DNA of 64,000 nucleotides, from contig OZ281497.1 in assembly GCA_965637545.1 (NCBI GenBank), positions 26,102,001-26,166,000 on the forward strand. Reading direction: 5' to 3'. Of the stretch, positions 17,185 to 59,215 are shown piece by piece. A program made the position numbers and the translations under genes. Positions within the stretch are counted from its first letter, which is position 1. Each line of letters begins with the position of its first letter. The notes under the pieces were generated by a model. It searched no databases. It saw only the letters and a list, made by a program, of their open reading frames with translations, and was not told the origin of the DNA. The DNA comes from Phallusia mammillata (lineage: Eukaryota).

Positions 17185-18176
17185 AAAATCGTCGACGGAC
17201 GATTACAGAGTAACTTGGCATTTTTACGAAACAATTTATATGCATGTATTATATCAGGCTTTTTATGCTGTTTTTTTCTATGGGTTCGGGTTTGGTTTAT
17301 GTCTTAAAATATTTTAAAACCCTTTATCGATGTTTACTCACGTATTTTTTAGTGGAGTTTTCTGAAGTTCACAAGTTTTGTGCTAACGATCCGGCTGATA
17401 TGAGTACGGTCATATGATTGTTCTATCAGACAACATAATAAACATTGCAGCATTAAACTTGTTGGAAATCATTTTCGGCAAGGAAGATGTCGCACAACAA
17501 GCAACTTACCTGTGGACTTTGTATCAAGTTGTTATGCGTAGGTGGTCAAACCTACTTGCGCAAGAAGGGTTCCTGGTACTTTGTTTGCGATGTTGCCTCG
17601 CCAGTTTCGCAAATAGCGCGTCCAACAGTCGCCAAACAATAATGTGACAACAGAAAGCCACTTTAGCAACGACGGAACGTGTTTATTAACCTCTTGCTGA
17701 ACGCCAAAATTGTCAGACCCAAACTGAACCATATTGTCATTTACAAAACTCGGGTTTAAAAGTTTAACAAAATATTTATTCCAGGACAATATATCGGACT
17801 GTACGCTATATAAGAACCTCGTTCGGGTTGTAATTGGTCCAAACCGATTGAGGACCCCGCCAACAGCTTTACGTAACAATTGTTGAGTGAAAGACACATT
17901 GCTGATAAAATACCTTTGGAAATTCGAAATAAACTAATTATATTGTGCGGTTTGCTAGGAGTGGTATGAAAAACCAAAGTGGCAAGAAAGAGGTCGCTAC
18001 TTGAAAAATAAATCTAAAATATCAAGATACCGTTGAAACAGATAAAAAAATCAGTGACGTCAGCACTGCAGGAAAATATTTCTCATAAAATCTGAACGCT
18101 CTATCTTCCTGGTATTGCTGCGGCTCACAATGTAGACGCGACTGTTTCGTAAAGATAGTAACCTAGGTCCTGTGGC
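17185..18176. repeat. Second copy of 13756-14739, fused to the broken NLR-A NACHT exon
   Basis: Direct sequence identity; the junction lies at about 18174-18176. Confidence 0.95.
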
Positions 18177-19352
18177 CACTTTTTTGCTGATGTGGTTTTT
18201 CCCATTCCAGCTTGTCCAACCACACCAACTACATTTCCATGTTTTTCAATGTAGTTTTGTTTTGCTTCCATTTTATGTTCTTTGAACTTCTTCTCTGCCT
18301 CTTGTTGTGCAATCTGTTTTGCACGAGGGAACATTTCTTCATCGGTAATGTGACTTTCTAGTGTTTTGTGAAGTTCATCTCTACCGTCATGATGTCCTTC
18401 TGCTTGAAACTCGTCGCTGATTTGTTGTGGTTTATTGACCATTGCAACGGGGACGGGTTCTATAGCTCGGTCCAAAAACTCAGCTAGTGTCGATTCTTCA
18501 CTGACGATGACTTTGACTTCTCTCTTTAGTAGAAACTTCAGTTGTTCACCTAAACAACATTCATTCTGCAAATCACTACTAGCATCACGCCAGTTTAAAT
18601 TATGGTATTTTATTCAGTGGTACATGTACTATTTTTTGCATTTTAACTAATACCAAATAAAACCTTTTCTCACATTTTTCATTTTCTGCGGCTTGTGTTG
18701 TTTGATTTTGATTTGGTAAAGCATGGGCTGCTGTAGATTGATTTGTCGCTGTCCTACGTTGTGTTGCTGTAGAACTTAGGGTTTGTGGTTCTACATCCAA
18801 AGGTGAAGTCGACTGGTTGCGGCATGTATGTGGTTGATGGGATGTGGACGGGGTTTCATCAATTGACTTTGGCGAGGTTTCTTCCTCCAAAGCAACTGGT
18901 GCAGGTGGTTGTGCTGAAGTGTGGGGTTGTTCATGTATATGCTAAACCGTTTGTTGCTGTTGAACAAGGGTATAATAGTTGTGTTGATGAAGTTCTACTG
19001 GTGCATTGAACACTGCTCCAGTTGTGTGAGTGATTTCATCTGCTTTTTCCTGAAAAGTACAAAAATGTTTGACATCTGTACCAACTCTTTTGCTCTTATT
19101 ACCTACAATATTTATAACTTTGTTCTTTTGATCGATTGGACAAACTTGAGCTGGATGTGGTTGGGGTACAACATCTCTTGATTGTTCGAGTAGAGGGACA
19201 CTTTCACCAGATTGTTGGGAACCTTGTGGCAGTCTTGTGTGAAGTTCACTGTCACCCGATTCTTATGTAAAGTTTGGTTGGTCACGTAGGTTTCGGGCAA
19301 CAGTGGGATTAGAACTTTCGTTTCGAGGTTGGTTTTCTATATTTTCTGACAT
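18174..19352 (-). pseudogene. NLR-A pseudogene 5' part: exons 19107-19352, 18674-19049 and a NACHT exon from 18549 truncated just after Walker A
   Basis: Homologous to exons 1-3 of B/C with intact splice sites. In-frame TAA at 19263-19265 and TAG at 18942-18944. Homology stops after GQAGMGKTTSAKKW at about 18174. Confidence 0.88.
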
Positions 19353-29800: not shown

Positions 29801-32800
29801 TGATGATATAACATCACAAATGTAGGCACTTGGGTCGTTACATTTTGTTGTAAAATTACGCTTGTTTGGGACTTTGGTTTCTAATATTTCTGACACGGAA
29901 TGTGCTAATTTTCGGGATCATGTTCTGAGTAGCTATTTTACGTAAACTTTGAAGAGGAGATAAGTAATGCTACATGCAACGTTATTTTGCATGTGTTGTT
30001 TTATAATCATGTGAGCAGTGACGAGTTAACATAAAAAAATTCGTAGGGGGCGTCGAAATTTATTCTAACTTACAATAAAAATCTGCTGGAAGAGAAATAT
30101 TTGTAAAACCGCAGACATTTTGGAACACATATCACACAATCAAATCAAAATTATTCGAATGCAAAGTTTATTTGACTGACCACTTAGCACAAAAATGCTT
30201 AGAAAATAATTCCGATCCCAGCGTATGCTGTGTCTCGACATGGAATAAATAACTGATGTTACTACTTTCATTTAGGTAATTAGATTAAAATGTTGGCAAA
30301 TATTATTTTAACAAACAATACCGGAGTAGTGAAACGTTTCAAAAATGGTTGTCAGCAATCCTAAGACAAACAAATGGCACCCCAGGGAGAAACATAAAAA
30401 ATACTTTGCGTATTACAGTATCAAATATAAATATTCTGACCCACGTGATCACATAAAAAAACTAAGTAAAACTTTCTGGACACTGTTCACCTACATACGA
30501 ATGCCTAAATTACTTACAGGTGTTTTCAGTTGCAGTACAGAATCACAGAGTTGTCTGATTCCTTCGCTTTTGATGTCGCATATCCGCAGCGCCAGCACTT
30601 CAATGTTGTAAAGACAACAAGCCAACGAATTTGCACCCAGATCGCCAATCTTGTTGTCTGAGAGGTCGAGCTTCTGCAGCTGATGTTGAATTAACAACAA
30701 GCACATGTTAACACACAACAAACCAGACATTGCAATGACACACAATATAACAGTGGCCAATTCTGACCTTCAAACAATAGATGCTTTCGTTTATTTTATT
30801 TTTTGAATAATTTGTAAGTTTTATGGTAGGATTTTTCAAAACTTTCAAGCATGCGACGCAATAACACACTATTTTTTTGTTCCGCGACACACCTGGCAGC
30901 AATACAAAAGTTGTAAGAAAGTAAGTTAATTTGCGACTCTATTGTGGTTGATAAGATTGCTTTTGATGACAGCTAAAAAAGAATAAGCTTTTAAACGTTG
31001 TAATGTGCGCATGTTTTTCGTTATAAGTCTTATATAACCAGACTTGGACAACTAGATTTTTTTTCGGTTTTTCAAATTAGATTAGAATTAAAATTAGAGC
31101 ATCTCCTTTTTTACAAATTAGATTAGAATTAGAATTAGAATTTTCTCAAAATCTAGAAATTAAACTAGAATTCAAACTAGAATTAGATTTAAGCCAACCA
31201 ACTTTAGTTTGTTTGCACATTTAAAACAACACGATTCGGTGCATCTAAAACGTGTTTAAACGGAGCAGAGTGCCAAATTTCACTGATAAACGTGTTTCAG
31301 TGATGTTATTTGGTCTTGTTAATTGCATGGTTTTGTGAGCTTTGGTTAAAAAATGCGTGCTCAGGTCACATGCCTAAAAGTGCCGTTGGACAAACTAGCG
31401 ATTTTGGGAAAACTGTGAATTAGATTAGAATTAGAATTAGAGCTTACTCGATAACTCTAAATTAGATTAGAACTAGAATTACCGCCATTTTGCTCTAATT
31501 TGCCCAACTAGACAACTAGAATTATCTAGTTGTCCAAGTCTGTATATAACACCACAATATACAAGCTTTTGCTGTCAGTCATAGTTTGTAGAGTTTTTCT
31601 GGCAAATGTAATTTTATTCCGACGTTTCGACGTCCTATACAGGTCGTCTTCATAAGGATAAATAACACTAAACGCGACGAGTGCAGTGTACGATAAACAA
31701 AGGTAAAGAGAATGGAACGCAAGCACGTAACAAAGCAACGAAAACGCCGCGCGATAACGAGTGATTGGGTCACTAATCATTAAGCAGGCGCCTGTAGCAC
31801 TCTGAAAGCATCACGTCCGTTTTGATGTTCATTGTGTTGCTGTTGCCCCGTTGATGAATTTTCCATGACTCACGAAATTGTCTTTCCCTGTAGTCAGGCT
31901 CCTTGGATCCAACAGACGCCGCATTAAAATTACAATCACAAGGCCACCGTATTGATTTCAATGTTCCGTCTGTTGTGGCCCGGAAGCCTGACTACAGGAA
32001 ACGAATAGTTCGTGAGTCATGGAATATTCACCAACGGGGCAACACAATGAATATCAAAACAAAAGTGCTTTCAGCGTGCGCTGCACTGGTCGCATTGAGT
32101 GTAATTTTCCCTGATGAAGACGACCTCTACAGGACGTCGAAACGTAGGAATAAAAAAATGTGGTTGTTTTTGAATTTTTTTATTTGATATGATTTGTTAA
32201 TTTCACAGCAATAAATATTTGTGTCCATTTTTTTGTAGTATAACTCAAATAGCAAAGGTTTTGAATGGTCAGAATGTTGCGTTATAACAGAGTCCATGTT
32301 TCAAATAAAAATATTCTGACCCACGTGTTACGTAAACTAATAAAAAACTTTCTAGAAATTGTTCACGTACATGGATATATTACTTACAGGCGTCTTTAGT
32401 TGCAGTACGGATTCGCAGAGTTGCCTGACTCCTTCACTTCCGATGTCGCATCTCCACAGCACAAGCATTTCGATTTTGTGAAGACAACGAGCCAACGAAT
32501 TTGCACCCAGATCACCAATCTTGTTGCGGGAGAGGTCGAGTATCTTGAGCTGATTAAATTAAAAACAAGCAAATGTTAACACATAACACAGCAGGCAGAG
32601 AAACATCACACAATATTACACTGAGCAATTATGATCTTTAAAAAGTAGGTGCTTCCATTTATCTTTCAAACAATTTGTAACGTGGTTAACAAGCCATAGC
32701 TAAAATTCTCTCAGGTAATGCGCATTATTTAAATAATACGCATTACCACAAGTCAAAACTTGCATACGCGTCTTTTATGACATACAGGACATTTTAAGTC

Positions 32801-35648
32801 GCTAAATTCAAAAACATCGCAAAACTTGAAAACAGAATTAGTTTGTTACTAATTTGGTAGAAAATAAAACTGTCGGTCATATATCACACAAAAAATAACT
32901 TTACCTACTCCCGCGATCTGTGCCTAATATTTGCAGTCAATACAGTAAAGGGTAAATGTGCATTTTGCACCATGAGATATACCTTTAAAATCATGTTTAA
33001 ATTTTGTGATACGCAAAAAATGCAACGCATAATTATATTTACTGCCATTATTGCCCTAAACAGAGTTTTTAAACTTTAATTATGTGCAGGAAATCATGTT
33101 GAATAATTTAACGAGATAGGTACAATATATTTTTCAAATTAAGGTTGCAAACTTTTGCATTCACCCGATTGAAACATTGTTTGTTACAGCGCAAATTAAA
33201 TCCAGTTTTGCTATTTGAATCGACCAGGTTGTCATTCGTAATCGAAATCCTAATTACAGTAATACCGGGTTGGATCTGTGTTGAAGCACAAAGGAATGGT
33301 TTTCGACGTCATCAGGAAGAAGAGATGAATCACTGAGGTCGAGCTCATCAGGAAGTAAGGAGGCGAAAGACATAGCAATTTGCAGATCATTCATCTCATG
33401 AGCCCAGCTAAACACTCGACCATCTCTTGTTATGCTGTTACCGGTCAAGAATTCGGTTAACAAGACTTTCTTTAGTAACCAATCTTCACTGGAAGTTGCA
33501 TCGACAAGGCTTTCAAGAGTATTAAAAACCGAAGAATCACAGATTCCGAAGACAAATTTGGAAACAACTTCCCATCTGTCCTCAGTTAGTTGCTTCAGTT
33601 GCTTTTCAAATTTCGTGAAGGGCATGATGATCATCATGTAGAAAGCGGCAAAAAATTCCTGCCAGGTGAGGTGAGAAAAGTATCTTATTTTGTGTCCGTC
33701 TAATATCGTCAGCTTCAGATTCACTTGCTTTGTTACTGATGTGGTAAGGAAGGCGTCGGCTGTGGAAGATTTAATTCCAGCTTTTTTAAAGTTCTTGTCT
33801 TTATATACCAATTTGCCTTTAAGAAATGTATCCCAAGCCATTTTGGCCAGTTTGTCCAATTCGCATTCTTGGCCCTGGAGATGATCTGTTGTTACGTATT
33901 GGCTACAAGTAAAAGCAAAAACCCGCGTGAGCGAAACAAACTGAATATCTCCATCGTAACTCATCAGGTAGTTGAGTGTCAATATGAAATTTGCAGGAAC
34001 ATAGCAGTACGCAAATACATAAGGATTTTGGGTCAGTTTTTGATGTATCTCATTATATTTTTCGCCACATAGCTGACGTCCGAGTTCATTCCGTGATGTT
34101 TGAGTTAAACCAAGTATCTGGACTATAAACTTAGGTCGGTATGATGGATGGAGCTTGTATAGTTGAGCTGGACGTGATGTAAAAATCTTTCGAGCACGTG
34201 GAAGCAAGTTTCCTGCAGCCAAATGCTTCAAATAACATTCTGCAGAGTTTTTTCCATGTAATATTGGTTTCGAAACCGAACTTGAAAATGATTCGAATGC
34301 TGCCTCATCTAAACCATCGAAAATGATTAAAACATGAGAATCACTGCAAATAGCAGTAAGTATAATGTTTGCCTCGTCAGGTGTGCAGTTCCATTCTGAC
34401 AACATTGCGGAAATGAGAAACTGAAGGAGTGTCATTTTTGCTGTGAAGTTAAGGAGCCTGATCACAATGTAAAAAACAAATGATACCCTTCCACACAATT
34501 GTCCATCTAACGCTTGCAGGGCCCACTTTTTAGCTGAAGTGGTTTTTCCTATTCCAGCTTGTCCAATCACACCAATTACATTTCCATGTTTTTCAATGTA
34601 GTTGTGCTTTGTCTCACTTTTGTTTGCTTTAAACTTCTTCTCCGCCTCTTGTTGTGCAATCTGTTTTGCACGAGAGAACATTTCTTCACCGGTAATGTCA
34701 CTTTCTGGTAAGTTGTAAAGTTCCTCTCTGCGGTGATAATGCCCTTCTGCTAAAAACTCGTCGTCAATTTGTTGTGGTTTGTTGACCATGGCAACAGGGA
34801 CGGGTTCTATGGCTTTGTCTAAAAACTCAGCTAGTGTCGATTCTTCACTGGCAGTAGCTCTGACTTCTCTCTTTAGTCGATACTTTAGTTGTTCACCTAA
34901 ACAAGAAAAAATTCTATGAAAAACAAATCGCATCACGCCAGTATGCTCTACGCAATATTATTGAACGGCAATTTTAAGTAGAATTGTATTTTTTAAATAA
35001 ACAAACAACTTGATCATACATATATCATTTTCTGTGACTTGTGTTGTTTGTTCATGTTGACTAGCTGAAGACCGAGCTGATGTAGAATGACTTCTCGATG
35101 TCCGAGGTTGTGTTGCAGTAGCACGGAGGTTTTCTGGTGCCGTTTCGAGTGATGAAGTCGACTGGTTGTGACATGTATGTGGTTGATGTGATGCAGACGG
35201 GGTTTCATCAAATGATTTTGGCGAGGTTTCTTCCTTCGTAGCAACTAGTGCAGGTGATTGTGTTGAAGTGTGGGGTTGTTCATGTATATGCTGAACTGTT
35301 TGTTGTTGTATAGAGTAGAAATGTTGATGAAGTTTTACTGGTGCGTTAAACACTGGTCCGGTTGTGTGGATGTTTGTGTCTCCAAACTGAGGCGCCTCTG
35401 CTTTATCCTGCAAATTCACGCACGTAATTAAATAAACAAATACTTTTCATTTTTTTAATTCTTACAATGTTTATAACTTTGTTTTCTTGACCGATTGGAC
35501 AAATTTGACTGGAGCTTGTTTGGGGTACAACTTCACTTGATTGTTCGAATGGGCTTGATTGTGGTAGAATGTCACCCAAGCTTGGGGTTGGGCTGGGCAC
35601 GGATGTAGCATTCTCAGATTCGGGCGTATTTGATGCGTCATCGGCCAT
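26820..35648 (-). CDS. NLR-B: NACHT-LRR receptor, 951 aa; exons complement(35466-35648, 35020-35407, 33266-34896, 32388-32549, 30518-30679, 29449-29613, 26820-26984)
   Basis: Walker A GQAGIGKTT, Walker B LIIFDGLDE, IFTSRP sensor and FSHLTWQEFFAA winged-helix motif lie in the 1631-nt exon. Three phase 0-0 RI-like LRR exons and a terminal LRR exon follow. Splice sites are GT/AG and the exons total 2856 nt in frame. Confidence 0.9.
28618..29051. mobile_element. hAT-type MITE in the last intron of NLR-B
   Basis: TIR TAGTGTTTCCCAACC / GGTTGGGAACCACCG and a perfect TSD GTATAGAC. Confidence 0.88.
31039..31542. mobile_element. hAT-type MITE with internal (TTAGAA/TTAGA)n arrays, in an NLR-B intron
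   Basis: Perfect 18-bp TIR CAGACTTGGACAACTAGA and TSD TATATAAC. The empty site is present in the paralogous intron at about 51474. Confidence 0.92.
31585..32160. mobile_element. Two inverted 3' fragments of a Penelope-like element in an NLR-B intron
   Basis: Both strands encode GIY-YIG C-terminal-like peptides (PDYRERQFRESWKIHQ...MNIKT..LSECYRRLL and PDYRKRIVRESWNIHQ..MNIKT), each followed by a hammerhead-like motif. Confidence 0.75.
32104..32152 (+). ncRNA. Minimal type-I hammerhead ribozyme motif (Penelope-associated)
   Basis: CUGAUGA at 32111-32117; stem II GACG-CCU/AGG-CGUC; GAAA at 32139-32142; palindromic ACGU stem III; GUA cleavage triplet at 32144-32146; stem I UUCC/GGAA. Confidence 0.65.
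33266..34896 (-). CDS. NACHT-domain exon of NLR-B
   Basis: Long ORF in the track (33254..34936). Acceptor tttag|GT at 34896 and donor CCG|gtatta at 33266 give phase 1 in, phase 0 out. Confidence 0.93.
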
Positions 35649-36165
35649 TTTTAGAAACAATAAAAACAGTCACCTATTTCCTGCATGACGAAAACAACAA
35701 TTTGGCTCTATGACTACGTTTAACAATGGTGATGGCCTTATTTCGAAACGTGTTTGGTGACTATAGCCTTTTTTAAGGAAATTAAGAATTAAAAGCAAAC
35801 TCACAAAACATCATACTAGTTCGTAACAAGTATTGTAACATTACCACTCAACTTACAGAAAGTTTCATCTTGGCAGTACCTTTTTTCACAAAAAAAGGTT
35901 TACATTTGTTCAGTGGTTTTACAAAAGAAACAAATCCCTTGAAACCATGCAGTTAGTGTGGCAACCAATAGGAAGTCAGGCCATGGTGGCAACTCTCCAC
36001 GTTATATCATTGAGAATCGGTAAGCTTCTCAAAAATTGGTTTGTCGCTTAAACGTATTCGGAGGTTTGTGACAAGAAATCGTCCACTGTAGTATTCAGTT
36101 CGTGATACAATGCAAATGAAGACAATATCAAATGTATTTTAAGAATGTGATTAGCCTATACCAAT

Positions 36166-46321: not shown

Positions 46322-49300
46322 TCAGAATTCGAACACAACTTTTCCTCGCGACTTTGACCGGATGAGATCCTTCCCTGCTTCTGTGAAATTGTTTCCCAAA
46401 ACCCACAAATCGTGAATGTTGTGAACACATCGAGACAATGACTCAGCACTTTTTGTCAGGTCATTCCAAGACAAGTCAAGTAATTGGATCTAAATAAAAC
46501 AACTGGTAAGTGAATTCAATCAGTATGATTTGTGTATTTTTACGGAACTAATCAAAAAATTATGATGTCCTTTTATCACGTAATAGCACGTAAACAGCAT
46601 GCTGACAGGACACAAATAATTATTTTTATTATTTTTATTTTTTTCTAATTATTAAATATATTTTTCTATTTGACATTCTAACTAAGAAAGATAATGTTCC
46701 GCAGAATACAATGGTATGTCGTTTTATTTAGCATAAAACTTTCCAATTGTTTATTGTTAACTTCAGCAAATTCAGCTGCGCATTATCTTTAATTGTTTTG
46801 TTTTGTCTATTTTTAAGTAAGTTTAGTTCATTATTTGGATGAAGATGTATCAAACCATTGTGTCCTTCTGATATAAGTTTGGGGAGTTATTTATTATTGC
46901 TGGATTGCCCTACAGTTATCCAAGAACAGTATGTTACTACATAGATAAGACTGAAGTATTGTTAGATTGTGCGCAAACAGCCGCTTTTCTTTTGTTACAT
47001 AGTTTATATGTCTAAGAGAAGCATTGCTCGGCTTTAGGTGCTCCAGTCGAGGGCAATTTTCGAACGTTCGTTTGACAAGCGCAGGTATAAGAAGTTGTAA
47101 AAGCAAAAGAAAACTGAAGGGATCTAATTGCAGGAGTTCTTTTTTTAATAACGCTGAATCGAACGATGACGAATTTCTCTAGATCAATTTGTAGAAGTGA
47201 TTCCAAAGTCTTCTATTAAAACTTTTGATTAAACAAAGCAACAAAGCTTGGCCCTAGTATGGCAGTCACTGGTATAAGAAAGTTCAAAACAAGTTCGAGA
47301 AAAACTCAATAGTTATACAAACGTAGTTTGTTTACATAAATACTGAACTGCGTTACTCAAGTTAATCACGTAGGGCAAAAAAAGTTTTAAATTTACAGTA
47401 AACTATAAAACAAAGAACAAAGTGTAAGCAAGATTTACATTTGTTATACTTATCGGATTGCATCCCGCTTGGAATTTAATGGAGCTTCAAATTCATAAAC
47501 GACAGTTTCGCATTGGTGAACGCGAAATATATTTAACAACCCGGTGTCAACTGTAAAGTTGCTGATGCAGTTTTTGTCATTTTAAGTCGATGTTGATGTT
47601 TTTTTTAGTTTGATGCATGCGACAAAATCAGACGATGTGTGGTAAAAACTTTTTATTGGCATGTGTTGATTCCAGCATTTTAACAAGTGGAAATTTTGAC
47701 TAGAGTCAATGGTTGGACCTATAACACGCTTTAAATGTGAAACAAAAAAGTGAAATGAAGAGAAGTTATGTATATTCGTCATCGGTAAAGACAAACGCGT
47801 TTTTTATGGTGTGGTGTGTGTTTCTGCACTTTCGACAAATAAATTGGAAAGACATAAAATCTACCGATGATATCGATTAAAGGATATTTTAAATGTAAGC
47901 TTTGCAGTAATGTTTATAATGCCGTTATCAGCGGAAAGAACTATTGTTCATTTTAAATTTAACGTTTGATGCGTATCCTGAACTAATTAAATGTACTAAA
48001 CTAATTAAAAATAACAAACAAATTTTTTATAACATCTGTTCGTGCCTAAACCAAATTTCTTACAGGTATTTCCAGTTGCAGTACAGAATCGCAGAGTTGT
48101 CCCACCCCTTCGCTTCCAATCTTACATCCACACAACGCAAGGTCGTCGACATTATGAAGACAACGCGCCAACAACGATGCACCCACATTACCGATACTGT
48201 TTCTGCAGAGGTCGAGTCTCTTCAGCTGATGTTGAAGCAAAATAACACATGTTAACTAGTAACAAAGCAAAAGTGAAAAATAAACAATATAAGGTATGTT
48301 GGGTTAATGCAGGTTAAGTTTCTAAATGTTTCTGTAAACCAGTGGTGGAAATTATTTGTTGGGCACCAAAGAACTGAACAAAACTATAAGAGGGCACCAA
48401 AAAACTGTCTTGTGATGGAGAGCCGAACCAACAATAACTGGATTCTGCTCAGTAACCCGACACTGTATTATTTTGGATACAAATGGGTGCATAGGCTTTA
48501 TCGCGCAACAAGTTGTGTTTTATATAGACTTTAACCACCATCACATTTAGCTGTTCGCTTACTCATGTTCTTCGAAATATCTTTCGAAATAAAAGCATCA
48601 GTACCGTATTTTATGCACATCATACATAGGTGTATTATACACCCCTTTTTATTTATGTTTTAATTTTTTTGAACTCACGCGGGCCAGCCAGGTACAGCCC
48701 GGATGTTAAATGTCCAGATCTGTAAACCACCCCCTCTAGTGAAGATTTTGTTAACAAGTTCTATTTTGGTGTTTTGTACTGTTGGTGTTAGAGTCGTTTG
48801 AGGTAATGTGTGTTACATAAAAATAAAGGGTTAAGTTTTTTGGATATTACTTTCCCATCACACCTGGAATTTGAAAAAGGCGCGGCACGCTGAGCCTGAC
48901 TTATAATAAAGTAAGTATAAGAAAACCGCTCCCGTACTGCACAAAGTACGTTTGCAGCCTTGTGGATATTTAAATGTTGATCGCTTGTTACATTTAAATT
49001 GTTGCGATGTCGGACAATGTGGGGGAAAATACTAGTCTGCTAGCTACATGTGCTTTAGTGCTCTTCAACCGGTGTGCACGGTGCACCCTAGGTTGCACCA
49101 AAATATGCATGTGGTGCACCAGTACGAAAGGGTATACAAGGGTGCATCACAAACTTTTAATAAACCATTAATATTTGACTGCCAGGATATTAGAAAAAAG
49201 ATGTAGGTTTCAAATGATGTGAACCAAGGTAAACTTTTTTAATGTTTTATCCCCTTGTCAAGTTTGATAGTGTGTGAGTTAGAGTCGGGTTATATTAGGA

Positions 49301-52300
49301 CATCGAGTTTTGGCTTTTTCTCCGGTGTTTCACAGAAAAATGTTAACAAACAGGTTTTTCTGCGCCCGTACACACACTGCGACCAAAAACAGTCGCATCA
49401 TGACGTGTTTATCTGCGCACCGTCAGTTTGCCACTTATGTTTTATGATAGAGTTTCTCAAAATTTCCATGCATGGGACGCAATGACAAAGTTTTATTCCG
49501 CGGCACACCAGGCAGGTAAACACAAACTTGTAAAAAAAGCAATTTGCAACTTTATTGTGTTAGATAAGATTGCTTTTTATGACAACTCAAAACGAATAAC
49601 ATTTTAACGTTGTACTGCACGCTTGTATTCAAATATAAGTCTTATATACCACCAGATAATGTTTGCACTTTAGAATAGCAAATTTTGAAATTTCTCAGTG
49701 GGCACCAATGTGCTGCGACCAAGGATATCAGTATGGTATGGTACGATACGCAGAAGATATCATGAAACAGTACGATACGTAGGCCCGGTACGCAAAGAAA
49801 GCAGAGGTACTGGTACGGAACAATGGTACGCCTCTTCACCTGAGCGTACCACCGTGATGGTACACATAATAAATGCAGATTTAAAGGTTTTTTTTCAATC
49901 GTTACCATTAGCAGATAATATTGAAATTGCCAGAATGTTGAATTTTAATTGTTTGTGACATGATTTCATCACAATGTCACTGTACCAAAAGAGGAATAAA
50001 GCAGTTGATGACGTCACTGCATAATATTTTGTCCTTACAGGGCTGACTGCTATGCAATAGGAGATTTACACGCACTGTAGGTCGAATGTTAAAACGCGCA
50101 CATGACAATAACATAGTAAATCTCGTAGTCTTTTTTGCACCAATGATTTGGCATTAAAATATATGCTGTTGATCAACCCTTAATTTCGAATGCGCGGGTT
50201 ATGCAGTGGGTTAAATGGGGCAGGCCTCCTTATTAAATGGGGCAGGTTGTTAAATGGGGCAGGCCTCCGTTAAGCGCCATCTTGGTATCACTCTCCGTAG
50301 CGAGGTACGTGGTACGGTCAACACCAAACTTACCGTACCGTACTGCCATCCTTGGCCCCGACACACAGTTTAAGAATCAATGTTAGGTATTGACGGGGCT
50401 GTAGCTATAACTACTGGAACTCTGTAAGGTCATATGTTAATGCATTACACTTTTTTTTCGACTTTTGTGATCTGCATAATGGGTCGCAATTGGATATTGT
50501 AAATACAAAAACCGAGCAGCATTAGAGGTATCGAAGAGTCACATGCGTCTCCGGGACGTAGATTTGCAAACCCTTGTATACCAGAAAAAACTCATAACAT
50601 CACAAAAATATTGAACCATTTAAAAATCCACACTGTGAACTGAGTATTAATCGCCTTGCATTACGTTCACCTTTCGTAAGGTGTATTTGACTTGCGATAC
50701 AGAATCGCAGATTGGACTGACTACTTAGCATAAAAATATGCTTAGAAAATAAGTGTGGTAAACATGAATGTTTTATATGTACCAAACAGTTTCAACAAAT
50801 GTGGGTTTAATTAGGGGTTATTCACAGCGATAAACATTTGAGTGGCGTTATTGTAGTACAACTCAACTAGCAAAGGCTTTGAAAAGTCAGATTGCTGCCC
50901 TCTAACAGAGTTGCTCAACCTTTTTGGCTTTTGGATATCAAGAAAAAACAAAAATCGTTCGGCACCCCAGCGTACGCTCGACATGGAATAAATAACTGAT
51001 GTTACTACTTTCCTTTAGGTAATTAGATAAAAATGTTGGCAAATATTATCTTAACAAACAATACCGGAGTAGTGAAACATTTCAAAAATGGTTGTCAGCA
51101 ATTCTAAGACAAACAAATGGCAACCCAGAGAGAAACATAAAACACTGTTCGCCTACATACGAAAGCCTAAATTACCTACAGGTGTTTTCAGTTGCAGTAC
51201 AGCACAACAGAGTTGTCTGATTCCTTCACTTCCGATGTCACATCCACAAAGCACCAGCTTTTCGATTTTGTGAAGACAACGAGCCAACGAAATTGCACCC
51301 AGATCACCGATTTTGTTGTCGGAGAGGTCGAGTATCTGCAGCTGATGTTGAATTAACAACAAGCACATGTTAATTTGCGACTCTATTGTGGTATTGTGGT
51401 TGGTTTTAATGACAACTAAAAAAGAACAAGTTTTTAAACGTTGTAATGGACGCACGTTTTTCGTTATAAGTCTTATATAACACCACAATAACAAGCTATT
51501 GCTGCCAGTCATAGTTTGTAGAGCTTTTTTTGGCAAATGTGATTGTATTCCGACGTTTCGACGTCCTATACAGGTCGTCTTCATAAGGATAAATAACACT
51601 AAATGCGACTAGTGCAATGCACGCTGAACACCACAATGTTTGCACTTTAGAAGAGCTAATTTTTGGCAACACATTTGGAAATATCTCGCGGCGCACCAGT
51701 GTGCCGCGACACACAGTTTAAGAATCACTGTTTGATCGTATAGAAGTGGCTGTAGCTGTACTACTGGAAATCACATTTGTAATCGCATTGCAAGCTTCAT
51801 TTTCGACATTTGTGATATGCATATTTGTCGCAACTGAATATTGTAAATATGTTGTAATGACAAAAACTGAGCCGCATTAGAGTGATCGAAGAGGAAACGC
51901 ACTCTGAAGCCGCCATGATATGTGTAAAAGTTAAAAAATCAAAAGTTTTAAAAAAATATTGAAGCACACAACAACCCAAACTGCTGTCAGTAGAGTATTT
52001 GTCGCCTTGCTTTACGTTCACCTTTCGTAAGGTTTATTTGAGTTGCAATTCAGAATCGCAGATTGGTCTGACTACCTTACACAAAACAGTGCTTAGAAAA
52101 TAAGAGTGGTAAACATGAATGTTTTATGTGCAACAAACAGTTCAAAGAAAATTTAAATATAGCGACTATCTGACACAGTAGTGTGCAACTGTCGACTGTG
52201 GCTATTTAATATAATTTGTTAATTTCACAGCAATAAACATTTGTGTCGTGTTTTTGTATTATAACTCAAATAGCAAAGGTTTTGAAATTACGTAAACTAA

Positions 52301-55300
52301 TAAAAATAACTTTCTAGAAACTGTGCACGTATAGATGGATATATTACTTACAGGCGTCTTTAGTTGCAGTATGGTTTCGCAGAGATGCCTGACTCCTTCA
52401 CTTCCGATGTCGCATCTCCACAGGACCAGATACTCGATTTTGTGAAGGCAACGAGCCAACAAAGATGCACCCAGATCACCGATACTGTTGTCGGAGAGGT
52501 CGAGTTTTTTCAGCTAATGTTGTAGTTAAAATAAACAAATGTTAACACATGACAAAGCAGATTTTGAAACACCACCAACAGAGTGAACAATTCTAAACTT
52601 CAAACAATAGGTGCTTCCATTTATCTTTTTGTTGGTTTGTAACATGTATAATAAGCCACAGCTAAAAGTCTCTTTTTCAAACTTATACCACAAGTCAAAA
52701 CTTGCAGTTCGACAATTTGAGTCGTTGAATTGAAAAACATCGCAAAACTTGGGAGCAGAATTATTTTTTTACTATGCGCAATTTATTTGCCTTTTGATGC
52801 CAGCATAAGCTGCCCATAATGTCATGCGTTACACGCAACGTAACCTTACCAACTCCCTAAAATAAAGCATGAGAATCATATTCTCCACATGTCAAAGTAG
52901 TAATTAATTTCGCGCTGTAAAATGCCAACACTGTTATTTGGTGACGGTGGCATGTTTTAATATACTGGATAAAACCAACAGTACCACCATTTAAAATGCC
53001 ATTTACTGACAATGGCAGTTGTTGACATTTTCAATAAAAGTAGCGCAAGCTGCCAGGAAAAAAAGCTTTCCAACGTTTCAAAAAATTACTGTAAAAAGTT
53101 GTAAAACAGTACCCTGTGACGTCACACATCCTTTTTTTCGGTCACAACAAAACGAAAAAGTAGAGATACTGCCTTATTAGCAGCAGCCGAAAATTGTCTT
53201 GGTGTTCATAATCAGTACTTTTTACGTTATATTTATTTTGTTTGAACAAAATCATGTTGTTAAATTTTATATTCTCCTCATAGGAACATTGTTTTGGCAG
53301 CGGAATTTAAACCACAGTATTACCGGGTTTGTTCTGTGTTGAAGCACGAAAAAAAGGTTCTCGAAGTCATCGGGCAGAAAAAATGTATCGCTGCAGTGTA
53401 GCTCATCAGGAAGTAGGGGAGCAACAGAGAAAGCAATTTCTACATCATTGGACTCATGAGCCCAGCTGCAAACTCGCTTGATGTCATTTAGGCAAAGATT
53501 TCTGTTCGACGTAGTGAGCTCGAACATCAAAAACTTTTTAAGTGACCAATTCTGACTGAATCTGGTTGGAATTAGAGCTTTGAGTCCATTAACAACCGAA
53601 GGATTGCAAATCCCGAAGGCAAATTTGGAAACAACTTCCAATCTATCGTCAAACAATTGCATGTAAACATCCACAAACTCGTCACTGGGCATGATCATCA
53701 TCAGGTAGAAGGCGGAAAAAAACTCTTGCCAGGTGAGGTGAGAAAAGTATCTTACTTTGTGTCCATCTAATATCGTCAGCTTGAGATTTACTTGCTTTGT
53801 TATTGATGTGGTGAGGAAGGCGTCGGCTGCGGAAGGTTTTATTCCAGCTCTTTCAAAGTCCTCGGCATCAAACATAATCTTACCCTTTCGAAATGCATTC
53901 CAAGCCATTTTAGCCAGTTTGTCTAATTCGAATTCTTGGCCCTTTAGATGATCTGTTGTTAAGTATTGGCTACAAGTGAAAGCAAGAATTTGGGTAAGCG
54001 AAACAAACTGAATATCTCCTTCGTAATTCACCAAGTAATTAAGTGTCAATATGAAATTGACAGGAACATAACAGTAAGCATATACATTAGGGTTTTGAAC
54101 AAGTTTTTGATGTATGATATGATATTTGTTCCCACATATCTGACGTCCGAGTTCATTCTGTGATGTTGGAGTTAACCCATGTATCTGGACTATAAACTTG
54201 GGTCGGTATGAAGGATTGAGCTTGTATAGTTGAGCTGGTCGTGATGTAAAAATCTTTCGAGCTCTAGGAAGCAAGTTTCCTCCCGCTAAATGCTTCAAGT
54301 AACATTCTGCAGTATTTTTTCCATGTAGCGTTGGTTTTGAAACCAAACTGGAAAATGACTTAAATGCTGCCTCATCTAAGCCATCACAAATTATTAATAC
54401 ATGAGGGTCACTACAAATGGCAGCGAGTATCATGGTTGCCTCTTCAGGTGTGCAAATCCAATCCGATAACATGGTGGAAATGAGAAACTGGAGGAGTGTC
54501 ATCTCTGCCATAAAATTAAGCAGCCTGATCACTATGTAAAATACAAACGTTAATCGTCCACACAGTAGTCCATCTACCGCTCGGAGGGCCCACTTTTTGG
54601 CTGAGGTGGTTTTTCCTATTCCAGCTTGTCCAACCACAGCGACTACATTTCCATGTTTTTCGATGTAGTTTTGTTTTGCTTCTATTTCATGAGCTTTGAA
54701 TTTTTTCTCAGCTTCTTGTTGTGCAGTTTGTTTTGCACGAGGGAACATTTCTTCACTGATAATGTGACTTTCTGGTCTTTTGTAAAGTTCGTCTCTGCGG
54801 TTGTGATGTCCTTCTGCTAGAAACTCGTCGTCAATTTGTTGTGGTTTGTTGATCATGGCAACTGGAACGGTTTCTATTGCTCTGTCTAAAAACTCAGCTA
54901 GTGACGATTCTTCACTGGCAGTGGCTTTGACTTCTCTCTTTAGTCGAGACTTCAGTTGTTCACCTAAACAAGAAAAACTATGTGAAACACAAATCTCATC
55001 ACGCCAGTATACACTACGCAGTGTTATTGAGTGGTAAGTTTAAGTTGATTTGTATTTTAAATGAACAAACAAACTGTTCATACATATTTCATTTTCTGTG
55101 ACTTGTGTTGTTTGTTCATGTTGATTTGCTGAAGACTGGGCTAATGTAGATTGGCTTCCCGGTGTCCCTGGTTGTGTTGCAGTAGCACAGAGGTTTTCTG
55201 GTGCCGTTTCGAGTAATGAAGTCGACTGGTTGCGGCTTGTACACGGTTGATGTGATTCGGACGGATTTTCAGCAAATTTTGGCGAGGTTTCTTCCTCCAA

Positions 55301-55713
55301 AGCAACTGGTGCAGGTGGTTTTGTTGAAGTGTGGGGTTGTTCATGGCTATGCTGAGCGGTTTGTTGTTGCTGAACAAGGGTATAATAATTGTGTTGATGA
55401 AGTTCCACTGGTGCGTTGTACACTGGTCCAGTTGTATGGATGTTTGTGTCTCCAAACTGAGGCGCTTCTGCTTTATCCTGCAAATTCACTCACGTAATTA
55501 AAATAAACAAACACTTTTGTTTTTGTTTTTATTTCTTACAATATTTATAACTTTGTTTTCTTGACCGATTGGACACATTTGACTGGAGCGTGTTTGGGGT
55601 ACAACTTCCCTTGATTGTTCGAATGGGCTGGACTGGGGTAGAACTTCACCCAAGCTTGGGGACAGGGGTTCAGCATTTTCAGATTCAGGCGTATTTGACA
55701 CATCTTCGTCCAT
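46322..55713 (-). CDS. NLR-C: NACHT-LRR receptor, 953 aa; exons complement(55540-55713, 55084-55477, 53324-54963, 52352-52513, 51180-51341, 48064-48225, 46322-46489)
   Basis: Same exon structure as NLR-B. Walker A GQAGIGKTT, Walker B LIICDGLDE, IFTSRP, FSHLTWQEFFSA; three 162-nt LRR exons; exons total 2862 nt in frame. Confidence 0.9.
49720..50354. mobile_element. MITE (hAT-like) in an NLR-C intron
   Basis: TIR CAAGGAT(ATC/GGC)AGTAYGGTAYGGTA; degenerate 8-bp TSD GCTGCGAC/GCCCCGAC; empty site GCCGCGAC at about 51703; internal TTAAATGGGGCAGG x3. Confidence 0.75.
51510..51630 (-). mobile_element. Penelope-like terminal fragment in an NLR-C intron
   Basis: Near-identical to 31585-31700, including the CTTATGA...GAAACGTC motif. 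Confidence 0.7.
53324..54963 (-). CDS. NACHT-domain exon of NLR-C
   Basis: Long ORF in the track (53267..54856) extended to the acceptor at 54963; donor CCG|gtaata at 53324. Confidence 0.93.
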
Positions 55714-56632
55714 TTTTGAAAATAATAAAAACAGTTGCCTATTCCCTGCATGACAAACACAACAATTATGCTGTATTGCTGCGTTAAAAATCGAGTGATG
55801 ATGTTATTTTCAAACGAGTTGTGAGACACTTGGTCTGTTTGATGGACAGCAACAAATCCGCTTAGGAATTAAAACTAAACTCTCAAAACTACACACTAGT
55901 TCGTAACGCGTATTGTTGCATTGCATCTCCCTGAAAAGGTTACAGAACTTAACAATAACCAATATTTTCCTCGTATTTTTGTAAAAATCGCAAACAACAT
56001 GACCAACAATAAAAAACGAGCAATGACATTTTTAACAACATTTGTTATCGCTATATTCCTGTCGCGCGGTTTCTTCACCCTAAGTTTTGCAGTTTTACCA
56101 TAGCTAACATTATACAGTTGATCTCAACCGTAACAAGCTACAGAAATATGTGCTCGACTGCCACATGACTTTCATGGTCATTTATCAACGTTAATGTCAA
56201 AAAAATTTAGTATTTCAAAGATAATTAAAACAGAGCGATTATTTCGATTATTATTGTACGATTTAAACTGCATTTTTGGCATTTCTCTTGTTGTGGCTTA
56301 ATTTTTTTCTTGCTATAAATATCTATGTCAAATCTCAATTTTTTTGCAAAACTTAAACCGCTACAAAATTTTCAAGTTAATTGTCAAAAAGGTTCAGTCA
56401 TTCTGCCTCGGCAGACAAGACCTGGGTTGGGGTTTTTGGAGCACGCAGCAGACCTTCCCAGCAAATTTTCAGATTGGAGTTAGCGCAAAATTTTGTACGT
56501 TTAACACATTTACTGTAATTTAGATCAATTCTCTTGAAACGAAAAGTTGACAAATAAAGTGTTTTTATTGAACCATTGTAGTGACCCCTTGACCGGTGTA
56601 CTTTCGTGTTTATGATTGCCATTAGCCTATAC

Positions 56633-56970: not shown

Positions 56971-58657
56971 GCCTATACAATGGCATGCTGCGCGCAATCA
57001 GTCAATGTAATCTAGAAAAGCACGGAATCTGCTTAATTTGGTTTCGGCCGATTTAAACGAATCATTTTTGACTTCATGCGAAGTTGTAAGCTACGCGTTT
57101 GACATAAAATCTTTTAAGTTGTAGTTGTTTTTCTGCCAGGCAGTTGTATGGGGTTTAAGGTTGCCTCCGCCGTGGTTTAACCAACAAATTATTTGAACGT
57201 AACCAAATCTTTGATTAAATTCGCCAACCGAACATTCGGTACATCTCTACTGCAAACATTGCGAGATCGCTTTTTATGTACATTGCGTAAACTTAATCAG
57301 TGGTGTGCATTTGGGCTGTACAGTTGTGAAGAGATTGCAATTTAACACCACGAGAAAATGAAAGTTAGTATGTGTCTAAGTTTACTTTCAGAAAATGCGT
57401 CATTTATTTCTCATCTTTATATAGTTAAGCAATCTTTGTATTAGAAGGTCCCAAACTTTCCATAAGGAAGTGGGAACAAAGGTTTCAGCAACTTCATCAA
57501 TAATCAGCGGAGTTTCCCTGCGTTCTGCATGATATCGCATTTTATCGATTCTATTGAAGTAAGGTTGAGTTGGCGAAATGACTGATGAGCGTTACTTCCT
57601 GCTTTCGTGCATTCAAACCATGGGTAAAATAAGCTTCAAATTTCTTTGAAACTCAAACTTTCCTGGATCCAATACGAAACTTCGTCAGAACATACTTTTT
57701 TGCGGCATGGCTATTTTGTTTGGTTTGTAACCAAAAGAAAGAATGTAGAATCGGAAATTATCGAACATTTATCGACGACGAAGGACATCAAAGTTTAATA
57801 GTTTTTCGAATGTCACTTTGTTTTGACGTTCGTATTCGGTCACATCCTGCGCGTCGTAAGAAAGTTTTACGTTAATACGTGGATTATTATTGAGGTCCAG
57901 GGACGAGAAATTGTAAGGAACGCGCAAAACAATATGTAGGGTAGGCAATAGGTGGTATGTTGGAGAAATTTTGTTTCGTATGCCGCCAACGTTAACAACA
58001 GCTAGCGCAAACCATACAGCGTGCGTTCCAACCGCAAGAGAAGGAAGTTAAGGCTTATTAAGGCAACTCGACACCTCATTATGTCGACCCGACACCTTCC
58101 TTCCTTGCGCCAGAAAACGCAAATACGGTAACTTACGTACGGACTTTGGGATTTGAAAAAAATCATCGTTATTCAATTTTAATCCAATTTGCCCCGGCAC
58201 AAAGTTATGTATTTTTTATAAATCGTCATGCAATTCAGTTATTGGAAGGAATGGAGCAACGATTGTTCATAGTTACCACAAGTTGCAAGAAACATGCTCC
58301 AAAACAATAACAATGAAAAAAGTGTTCGGGCAATGCATTCCAATATCGTTGAGATGTGTCATAGCGTATGAAACAAAATAATGAAATAATTACCCATGTG
58401 AACATATCAAATCAACAATAACAAAAACGCAATAATTAGTCATAAGTGTAGGCAAATATGGCTCCATCAACTATCCTTTGAACATTCGTTGCCTTAACAA
58501 TAGCAATAGCAACAAAAAACACTAGATAACAATAACAGCAACAAACACTAGATCTGCTGCGTCATCTGGTCATAAAATATCGCACAATTGTGACCAAACC
58601 GTTAGACCTCAATCCCATGTACTTTGCACAAAAATATGCTGAAGGGACGTTTTAAAC

Positions 58658-59215
58658 CAGTAGTTCTTAACCTTTTTGGTGTGGTTTCCCACTAAAAGTT
58701 AACCACCTCGAATTTCCCATTTGTTATTTTAATAATGATGTTTTGTGCCCCACGTTAACAAAAAAAAAAACAATTTTAAATGAAATAATCTCGTAAAGCG
58801 ATTTGGTCTTGACCTTTAAGGTATACTGCAATCTTATTTAGTTTAAACAGTGCTTCTGTGAGAGATTAAACATTTTGGAATATTAAGTAGTCTCTTCTGC
58901 TTGTATTGGTCATTTATTGCATCACAATCAACCAAGGAAAGGCTTTTATTAGCAAAATAGCAAAGTCATTAATACTAAGTCTTGTCTGTGATGTAACAAA
59001 CCCGGCCTTTAGATTTCTATGTGTCTTGTAAGCCTTGGTGAAATTAATCTTACATGTTGTTGCGGAAAATTTTTTGCAAAATAACTTTCAACGGTTAATT
59101 AAAAGCCGGATTCGACCGTCGGACCCGAGTTTGGTTACCCGACTTACATATTTTCCCCCTGAAAACATTCAAATTTCACACTAGTGGGAAATTTCCCACC
59201 GGTTAAGAACCACTG
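58658..59215. mobile_element. hAT-type MITE
   Basis: TIR CAGTAGTTCTTAACC / GGTTAAGAACCACTG; TSD TTTTAAAC/TTTCAAAC. Confidence 0.82.

What the first reader, a model, noticed from the sequence alone, without database searches (positions are those of the whole stretch)
55382..55575. NLRs with no death-fold domain but tandem RHIM-like (amyloid-signalling) motifs at the N-terminus
Seen: the first ~190 aa of NLR-B and NLR-C are S/T/P/Q-rich and diverge freely, except for a block spanning the exon1/exon2 junction: C-P-I-G-Q-E-N-K-V-I-N-I | D-K-A-E-A-P-Q-F-G-D-T-N-I-H-T-T-G-P-V-(Y/F)-N-A-P-V-(E/K)-L-H-Q-H. In B this is 35312-35501; pseudogene A keeps CPIDQKNKVINI and HTTGAVFNAPVELHQHNYY. Established: RHIMs follow (I/V)-Q-(I/V/L)-G-x-x-N-x-h (RIPK1 IQIGAYNYM, RIPK3 VQVGDNNYL), and fungal NLRs such as NWD2 signal through short N-terminal amyloid motifs rather than death folds. 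Inference: IG-x-x-N-x-V and Q-F-G-D-T-N-I have RHIM spacing, so this may be a chordate NLR family that signals by amyloid templating. Caveat: both tetrads carry a proline (CPIG, PQFG) and are non-canonical, and no partner effector with the same motif was found in this window.
Basis: partly seen in the sequence, partly recalled or inferred. Interest (0 to 1): 0.85.

Follow-up and report, generated by a model that had tools for sequence, protein, structure and literature searches.

The report
Conserved unstructured head motif in sea-squirt NLRs
Three neighbouring sea-squirt immune-sensor (NLR) genes have no death-fold signalling domain. Instead they start with a floppy head holding one short, strongly conserved motif that probably passes the signal on, and its likeness to the RHIM amyloid motif is no better than chance.

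Summary
The window carries three minus-strand NACHT-LRR genes from an ascidian: B, C and pseudogene A. The best NACHT match is Phallusia mammillata 'COS1.5' at 61% identity.

Their first ~190 residues match no Pfam family. The equivalent region of the Phallusia protein is predicted disordered.

Inside this region lies the block at 55382-55575, split by a 62-nt phase-0 intron. It is the best-conserved part of the protein:
- B and C share a run of 31 identical residues.
- dN/dS is 0.06 in the block, against 0.5-0.7 in its flanks and 0.28 in the NACHT exon.
- The 20-residue core APQFGDTNIHTTGPVYNAPV is 19/20 identical in Phallusia, while the flanks are 26-29% identical.

The RHIM reading fails every test run:
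- No instance has the (V/I)-Q-(V/I/L/C)-G tetrad, and proline sits at its first position.
- The glycine of the first 'motif' is absent in Phallusia.
- Pfam and PDB searches found nothing.
- A small RHIM profile ranks these heads among random ORF pieces.
- No other protein with the motif turned up among 1.84 billion representative proteins.

Best reading: a conserved disordered interaction motif that replaces the death fold. Amyloid-like templating is neither excluded nor supported. Earlier follow-ups on other DNA of this genome reached similar verdicts on 'RHIM-like' claims.

The parts
55540..55713 (-). NLR-C exon 1 (58 codons, ATG at 55713). It ends with CPIGQENKVINI.
   Evidence: A contig from a probable RNA run covers 55541-55690 and stops at the donor.
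55478..55539 (-). 62-nt phase-0 GT..AG intron that splits the conserved block.
   Evidence: It is 53/62 identical to the B intron.
55084..55477 (-). NLR-C exon 2 (131 codons plus 1 nt, phase-1 donor). The conserved core is followed by a Q/H/S/T/P-rich low-complexity tail.
   Evidence: Contigs from probable RNA runs cover 55082-55320 and 55211-55414.
55382..55575 (-). The reported block in C (CPIG...HQHNYY, spliced).
55406..55465 (-). 20-residue core APQFGDTNIHTTGPVYNAPV, 19/20 identical to Phallusia P0001 residues 95-114.
53315..54963 (-). NLR-C NACHT / NOD2_WH / NLRC4_HD2 exon. The 3' end is approximate; the ORF runs on to 53267.
   Evidence: Pfam NACHT E=2.5e-16, NOD2_WH 8e-6..
48091..52513 (-). 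NLR-C LRR exons at about 52313-52513, 51168-51353 and 48091-48228.
   Evidence: tblastn with the LRR parts of P0022 and P0036. ORF 51153-51599.
35466..35648 (-). NLR-B exon 1 (61 codons, ATG at 35648).
35020..35407 (-). NLR-B exon 2. The core APQFGDTNIHTTGPVFNAPV lies at 35336-35395.
33257..34896 (-). NLR-B NACHT exon (ORF limits).
   Evidence: Pfam NACHT E=5.6e-20..
30506..32552 (-). NLR-B LRR exons at about 32361-32552 and 30506-30751.
18125..19262 (-). Pseudogene A: remains of the head exons (18666-19208) and a truncated NACHT start (18125-18571). The core is partly deleted and there is an in-frame stop.

Best explanation
B and C belong to an ascidian NACHT-LRR family whose first ~190 residues are disordered, low in complexity and evolve fast. 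The exception is one island of about 35-45 residues: (V/I)-x-N-x, a short spacer, then APQ(F/I)GDTNIHTTGPVYNAPV, then an H/Q/N/Y-rich stretch. I read this island as the family's signalling element, a short linear interaction motif sitting where other NLRs carry a CARD, PYD or death domain. When the NACHT domains oligomerise, many copies are brought together and recruit a downstream partner by avidity (induced proximity).

Shown: the gene structure, the NACHT-LRR identity, the absence of any recognisable N-terminal domain, purifying selection on the island, and its conservation across genera.

Inferred: that the island signals, and how. It is not a member of the RHIM family.
For: - Domains: NACHT, NOD2_WH, NLRC4_HD2 and LRR exons are present.
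- The heads match no Pfam family.
- AlphaFold2 gives pLDDT 23-34 for residues 1-184 of Phallusia P0001, while its NACHT part is confident. The block on its own has no secondary structure, pLDDT 53.
- Block dN/dS is 0.06, against 0.5-0.7 in the flanks.
- The core is 19/20 identical between genera whose NACHT parts are 54% identical. phmmer C against P0001 gives E about 1e-11 to 1e-12.
- The core is partly deleted in pseudogene A.
- Contigs from probable RNA runs are confined to the predicted exons and end at the donors.
- Other ascidian-like NLR loci carry look-alike N/G/I/V-rich motif exons upstream on the same strand. Their phase-1 donors match the phase-1 acceptor of the NACHT exon at three of the four loci, as in the window; the L005 acceptor could not be placed.
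- The literature describes ascidian NLRs as NACHT-LRR only (PMC11508797).
Against: - No partner and no binding domain is known.
- The island is longer (20-45 residues) than most linear motifs.
- Its similarity to the motif exons of more distant NLR loci is not statistically supported. Leave-one-out profiles fail to recover them. Only L005 and L009 match each other, at about 1e-3.
- Five of nine loci showed no motif within 4-10 kb upstream.
- The RNA evidence is thin and the runs are only guessed to be RNA.
- The disorder prediction for the head rests on an alignment only one sequence deep in that region.
Confidence: 0.55

Rival explanations
1. Amyloid-like (prion-like) signalling motif. Oligomerised NLR heads would fold into a beta-arch or beta-solenoid seed that templates the same motif in a downstream protein. 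This is how fungal NWD2/HET-S, PNT1/HELLP and bacterial BASS/BELL work. The motif would not be a canonical RHIM.
For: - The position and size are typical of NLR amyloid motifs: short, at the head of a NACHT protein, flanked by disorder (PMC7889193, PMC4262963).
- The core is rich in G, N, T, Q and H with hydrophobic residues in between, and carries one charged residue.
- Look-alike exons of related loci read TNISVINAGSGTNIAGRDINVV (L009), TNIEINEAGEASNIAGGNINLV and VSVQKIGNSNVAAGDIFFI (L005, two copies), a pattern like beta-solenoid repeats.
- Amphioxus has RHIM-NACHT proteins (PMC4262963).
Against: - Three conserved prolines lie within the 20-residue core.
- No protein other than these NLR heads carries the motif, neither among 1.84 billion representatives nor in the word-index searches, and there is none in the window.
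- No similarity was found to any solved amyloid core or to a Pfam amyloid motif.
- No amyloid predictor could be run.
- Short-motif searches need about 35 bits at that database size, so a diverged partner could have been missed.
Confidence: 0.25
2. Regulatory element rather than signal output: an autoinhibitory docking segment, a protease or caspase cleavage site (the conserved G-D|T), a degron, or a localisation signal.
For: - Strong conservation inside a disordered region fits any such element.
- An Asp is conserved in C, B, P0001 and L001.
Against: - AlphaFold2 does not dock the head onto the NACHT module.
- The Asp is not kept in L005 (N), and its position shifts in L009.
- No known cleavage or degron consensus fits. 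This was judged by eye only.
Confidence: 0.12
3. True, divergent member of the RHIM family, in tandem.
For: - PQFGDTNIHT and human RIPK3 VQVGDNNYLT (sequence as printed) share Q, G, D, N and T.
- A phi-phi-N element lies upstream in both.
Against: - The tetrad consensus fails in every instance.
- PQFG/PQIG has proline at the first tetrad position, where V-to-P inactivates RIPK3; CPIG has proline in place of the Q (PMC9444067).
- The glycine of the first motif is absent in Phallusia.
- Pfam RHIM gave no hit.
- A profile of the RIPK3 and RIPK1 RHIMs scores these heads at about 1 bit, ranks 364-1406 of about 10,100.
- Tunicates were reported to lack RHIMs and RIPK1 (PMC4262963, PMC12119088).
Confidence: 0.04
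4. No function: the block looks conserved only because B and C are recent duplicates or have undergone gene conversion.
For: B and C are about 78% identical overall, and intron 1 is 53/62 identical.
Against: - There are seven synonymous but only two non-synonymous differences inside the block.
- The core is 19/20 identical in another genus.
- The core has decayed in the pseudogene.
Confidence: 0.03

Closest known systems
Amphioxus RHIM-NACHT proteins (e.g. BF82280; Kajava et al. 2014, PMC4262963)
   Same: An invertebrate chordate NACHT protein with repeats, in which a short unstructured motif sits where a six-helix death-fold domain normally would.
   Different: The amphioxus motifs match a RHIM profile significantly. 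The ascidian block does not. The same paper states that tunicates appear to lack RHIMs.
Fungal and bacterial NLR amyloid signalling motifs (NWD2/HET-S HRAM, PNT1/HELLP PP motif, sigma, BASS/BELL; PMC7889193)
   Same: A short conserved motif at the N-terminus of a STAND NTPase in place of an effector domain, flanked by disorder and rich in G, N and Q.
   Different: Those are defined by the same motif on a neighbouring effector protein and by shown prion or amyloid behaviour. Here no partner was found, the core has three prolines, and nothing has been tested experimentally.
Vertebrate and viral RHIM (RIPK1, RIPK3, ZBP1, TRIF, M45; PMC9444067)
   Same: About 20 residues, disordered as a monomer, with a phi-G-x-x-N spacing and an upstream phi-phi-N element.
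   Different: The core tetrad (V/I)-Q-(V/I/L/C)-G is not met. Proline takes the first tetrad position in PQFG/PQIG and the Q position in CPIG. There is no profile similarity, and no RIPK-type partner is known in tunicates (PMC12119088).
Ascidian NLRs as described so far (NACHT-LRR or NACHT only, 'lacking the N-terminal domain'; PMC11508797)
   Same: Same family and architecture. The closest protein is Phallusia mammillata 'COS1.5' (P0001; 61% identity over the NACHT exon).
   Different: I found no description of a conserved N-terminal motif in these proteins (paper searches).

Membership tests
RHIM (RIP homotypic interaction motif) | Core tetrad (V/I)-Q-(V/I/L/C)-G (PMC9444067) | tested here: not met
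   The pattern [IVL]Q[IVLC]G..N occurs in none of C, B, P0001, P0022, P0067 or P0068. The actual tetrads are CPIG, PQFG and PQIG.
RHIM (RIP homotypic interaction motif) | Match to the family profile (Pfam RHIM model, or a profile of bona fide RHIMs) | tested here: not met
   No Pfam hit at E<=10 for the separate exons, the spliced block or the relatives. A profile of RIPK3 and RIPK1 RHIMs, with sequences taken, scores C at 1.1, P0001 at 0.8 and B at -0.6 bits. These rank 364th to 1406th of about 10,100 pieces.
RHIM (RIP homotypic interaction motif) | Short motif embedded in disordered sequence | tested here: met
   AlphaFold2 pLDDT is below 35 over P0001 residues 1-184. The block alone has no secondary structure.
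RHIM (RIP homotypic interaction motif) | Homotypic partner carrying the same motif | tested here: not met
   The profile search of 1.84 billion representatives returned only the NLR heads themselves. Region searches found nothing. The window holds no copy beyond A, B and C. Sensitivity is limited for short motifs.
RHIM (RIP homotypic interaction motif) | Forms amyloid fibrils or hetero-amyloid | not testable with these tools
   Needs ThT staining, electron microscopy, DAmFRET or solid-state NMR.
NLR (NACHT-LRR) family | NACHT NTPase with a Walker A motif, followed by winged-helix and helical domains | tested here: met
   PF05729 E=2.5e-16 (C) and 5.6e-20 (B). NOD2_WH and NLRC4_HD2 hits, and GQAGIGKT is present.
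NLR (NACHT-LRR) family | C-terminal leucine-rich repeats | tested here: met
   tblastn with the LRR regions of P0022 and P0036 hits exons downstream of both NACHT exons, E from 4e-4 down to 5e-9.
NLR (NACHT-LRR) family | N-terminal death-fold effector domain (CARD, PYD, DD or DED) | tested here: not met
   No Pfam domain. The head is predicted disordered. In B an in-frame stop lies upstream of the ATG.
NLR-associated amyloid signalling motifs (fungal HRAM/PP/sigma, bacterial BASS) | Short conserved motif at the N-terminus of a STAND NTPase in place of an effector domain | tested here: met
   In L005 and L009 the look-alike motif starts 12-17 residues after the Met.
NLR-associated amyloid signalling motifs (fungal HRAM/PP/sigma, bacterial BASS) | The same motif on an effector protein, usually encoded next door | tested here: not met
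   None in the 64-kb window and none in the databases.
NLR-associated amyloid signalling motifs (fungal HRAM/PP/sigma, bacterial BASS) | Predicted beta-arch or amyloid propensity, and prion behaviour | not testable with these tools
   ArchCandy, PASTA and similar predictors are not available here. The AlphaFold2 monomer model says nothing on this.

The most novel reading that the evidence does not exclude
Tunicate NLRs signal through a metazoan amyloid-like templating motif that is not a RHIM. This would be an animal counterpart of the fungal HRAM/PP and bacterial BASS motifs. It would have several sequence subtypes across ascidian NLR lineages and a partner that has not yet been recognised.
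Probability: 0.22. Interest if true: 0.85.

Novelty: new variant of a known kind. Interest (0 to 1): 0.5.

Why it matters
Ascidian NLRs are described as NACHT-LRR proteins with no N-terminal effector domain, so how they pass on a signal is unknown. This work pins down a defined peptide of 20-45 residues that selection keeps intact inside an otherwise drifting, disordered head. That makes it the obvious candidate for the output element, and it can be tested directly through its interactome, mutants and aggregation assays.

It also bears on an open question stated by Daskalov and Saupe (PMC7889193): whether RHIM is the only signalling amyloid in animals. As a caution, it shows that a phi-G-x-x-N spacing alone does not make a RHIM.

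Tried and rejected
- Pfam scans of the separate exons, the spliced block and all relatives found nothing beyond NACHT, WH and HD2.
- PDB sequence searches with the profile and with single blocks gave 0 hits at E<=10.
- The ESM Atlas look-up of P0001 residues 78-125 gave no usable hit.
- The representative-protein search with alignment A1 returned only P0001 and the two small ORFs of L005 and L009, which were already in the profile.
- Word-index searches restricted to the block found nothing in two length classes, 383-1218 aa and 138-437 aa.
- Leave-one-out profiles did not recover the left-out subtypes. The wider 'motif family' therefore rests on position, exon phase and resemblance by eye. 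Its membership:
  - type 1: the window genes and P0001;
  - type 2: L005 and L009;
  - by eye only: L001, L011 and possibly Clavelina P0022.
- A candidate in L003/L004 (HPYIGGTNKQ) was rejected because it has no ATG and no plausible splice sites.
- No motif was found upstream in L002, L008, L010 or L013.
- P0022 could not be located on a contig.
- TRAF-binding, IAP-binding and caspase-site readings of the core were considered by eye and dropped, because the key residues are not conserved between B, C and P0001.
- The read data gave no information on a 5' UTR exon.

Full report
**What is there.** The window has no N and about 37% G+C. It carries three related genes on the minus strand. ORF listing and reading of the DNA give two intact genes.
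- Gene C: exon 1 at 55540-55713, a 62-nt GT..AG intron, exon 2 at 55084-55477 with a phase-1 donor, and a large exon from 54963.
- Gene B: 35466-35648, 35020-35407, and a large exon from 34896.
- A decayed copy, A, lies at about 18125-19262.

The large exon matches Pfam NACHT (E 2.5e-16 and 5.6e-20), NOD2_WH and NLRC4_HD2. LRR exons follow downstream of both genes. The closest protein in 5.8 billion is Phallusia mammillata 'COS1.5' (P0001), at 61% identity over the NACHT exon. Next come many single-exon ORFs from ascidian-like contigs and a Clavelina 'NLRP3-like' protein. The genome is therefore an ascidian's.

**The observation.** The stated coordinates are exact. Once spliced, 55382-55575 reads CPIGQENKVINI | DKAEAPQFGDTNIHTTGPVYNAPVELHQHNYY, and 35312-35501 is the B copy.
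- B and C are about 78% identical overall and about 72% in the head, but the block contains the longest identical run of the whole protein, 31 residues.
- Codon counts show selection and not recent duplication or gene conversion. The block has 7 synonymous and 2 non-synonymous differences (dN/dS 0.06). The values are 0.51 before it, 0.69 after it and 0.28 in the NACHT exon. Fisher p = 0.022.
- The strongest evidence is the comparison between genera. In Phallusia P0001 the core reads APQIGDTNIHTTGPVYNAPV, 19 of 20 identical. The flanking head is 26-29% identical and the NACHT part 54%. phmmer links the two blocks at E about 1e-11 to 1e-12.
- Pseudogene A has lost about six residues of the core and carries a stop.

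**No death fold.**
- The heads of B, C and P0001 hit no Pfam family even at E<=10.
- AlphaFold2 on P0001, with 36 homologues in the alignment, models the NACHT module confidently. It gives pLDDT 23-34 for residues 1-184, though the alignment is one sequence deep there.
- An acceptor site lies about 35 nt upstream of the ATG in both genes, so a 5' UTR exon is likely. In B an in-frame TGA separates it from the ATG.
- P0001 begins at the equivalent Met.
- Contigs from three small runs guessed to be RNA lie only on the predicted exons. They stop at the two donors: 55541-55690, 55082-55320, 55211-55414 and 54740-54951. This is weak support for transcription and for the splice sites.

**Is it a RHIM?** The family is defined by the tetrad (V/I)-Q-(V/I/L/C)-G. 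A single V-to-P change at its first position in mouse RIPK3 is enough to block necroptosis (PMC9444067).
- None of the ascidian instances has the tetrad.
- PQFG (PQIG in Phallusia) has proline at that first position. CPIG has proline in place of the Q.
- The glycine of the first 'motif' is missing in Phallusia (AVEDKNMV), so the 'tandem' reading does not survive comparison.
- Pfam gave no hit.
- The motif profile and the single blocks found nothing in the PDB, which holds RIPK1 and RIPK3 RHIM chains, at E<=10.
- I took the human RIPK3 and a RIPK1 RHIM as printed by the PDB search and built a small profile. I scored it against about 10,100 background ORF pieces plus the spliced heads. C, P0001 and B score about 1, 0.8 and -0.6 bits, ranking 364th, 454th and 1406th.

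PQFGDTNIHT and VQVGDNNYLT do share Q, G, D, N and T, but this is at chance level once the number of possible comparisons is allowed for. Kajava et al. found RHIM-NACHT proteins in amphioxus but reported that tunicates seem to lack RHIMs (PMC4262963). RIPK1 homologues were not found in tunicates (PMC12119088).

**Is it an amyloid-type signalling motif of another kind?** The architecture fits: a short conserved motif at the head of a NACHT protein, flanked by disorder. I also looked upstream of the NACHT exons of nine other ascidian-like NLR loci. Four carry N/G/I/V-rich exons on the same strand.
- L001: APIFNVSGGAPIIGDQVHHHHGPTHNVIHQH.
- L005: two copies, TNIEINEAGEASNIAGGNINLVQHQHNYF and VSVQKIGNSNVAAGDIFFIEKQYNFY.
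- L009: TNISVINAGSGTNIAGRDINVVHQ.
- L011: STINIVNCQNIAVGEH.

All five of these exons end in a phase-1 donor. At L001, L009 and L011 it matches the phase-1 acceptor of the NACHT exon, as in the window. The L005 acceptor could not be placed. These look like beta-solenoid repeats.

The links are weak, however. L005 and L009 match each other only at about 1e-3. L001, L011 and Clavelina P0022 are not significant, and leave-one-out profiles do not recover the left-out subtypes.

The defining criterion of NLR amyloid signalling is the same motif on an effector protein, and it is not met.
- The window has no further copy.
- A full HMMER scan of 1.84 billion representative proteins returned only P0001 and the two small ORFs already in the profile.
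- Two word-index searches found nothing.

A short motif needs about 35 bits at that scale, so a diverged partner could escape detection. The core also holds three conserved prolines. AlphaFold2 on the block alone gives no structure, which says nothing either way.

**Verdict.** The claim of no death fold is supported. The RHIM label is not.

I commit to a conserved disordered interaction motif that acts as the output element through induced proximity (0.55). Amyloid-like templating is the main rival (0.25). Smaller shares go to a regulatory element, a true RHIM, or no function.

Earlier notes of this scan report other 'RHIM-like' heads and tails in the same genome: NB-ARC-TPR heads and ZU5-UPA tails. 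Follow-ups on the two ZU5-type tails judged the RHIM likeness to be at chance level or unsupported. The follow-up on the NB-ARC-TPR heads found no partner and left fibre formation open. I did not test those sequences. They are the first place to look for a shared motif.

Noticed in passing
L005:9140-9280 and L005:7872-8048 (the same locus as L006 and L007): Two motif-bearing exons lie upstream of one NACHT exon, one starting with Met and one about 1 kb closer. They are either a true tandem of motifs in one protein or alternative or duplicated first exons. phmmer between them gives E = 1.4e-3 in a database of about 10,000 sequences.
   Followed up: partly
window 14089-14460 and 17532-17897 (minus strand): Two copies, about 90% identical, of a 121-123-aa ORF (MSFTQQLLRKAVGGVLN...) flank the region upstream of pseudogene A. 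There is no Pfam hit, so this is probably part of a segmental duplication or a repeat.
   Followed up: partly
window 58520-59100: Summed contig depth in the DNA run X4 is 100-fold or more above most of the neighbouring bins, and many contigs end here. This is most likely a high-copy repeat or transposon.
   Followed up: no
L001:4082-4619 (minus strand): ORFs that look transposase-like by eye (Tc1/mariner type) sit between the motif exon and the NACHT exon. This suggests a transposon insertion in the intron of that NLR gene.
   Followed up: no
window 5496-7587: Another first-stage note places a three-domain beta/gamma-crystallin gene here. It was not examined.
   Followed up: no
window 55714-55760 and 35649-35690: A conserved acceptor site (tcatgcag) lies about 35 nt upstream of both start codons, so a non-coding 5' exon probably exists. 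Its position was not found.
   Followed up: partly
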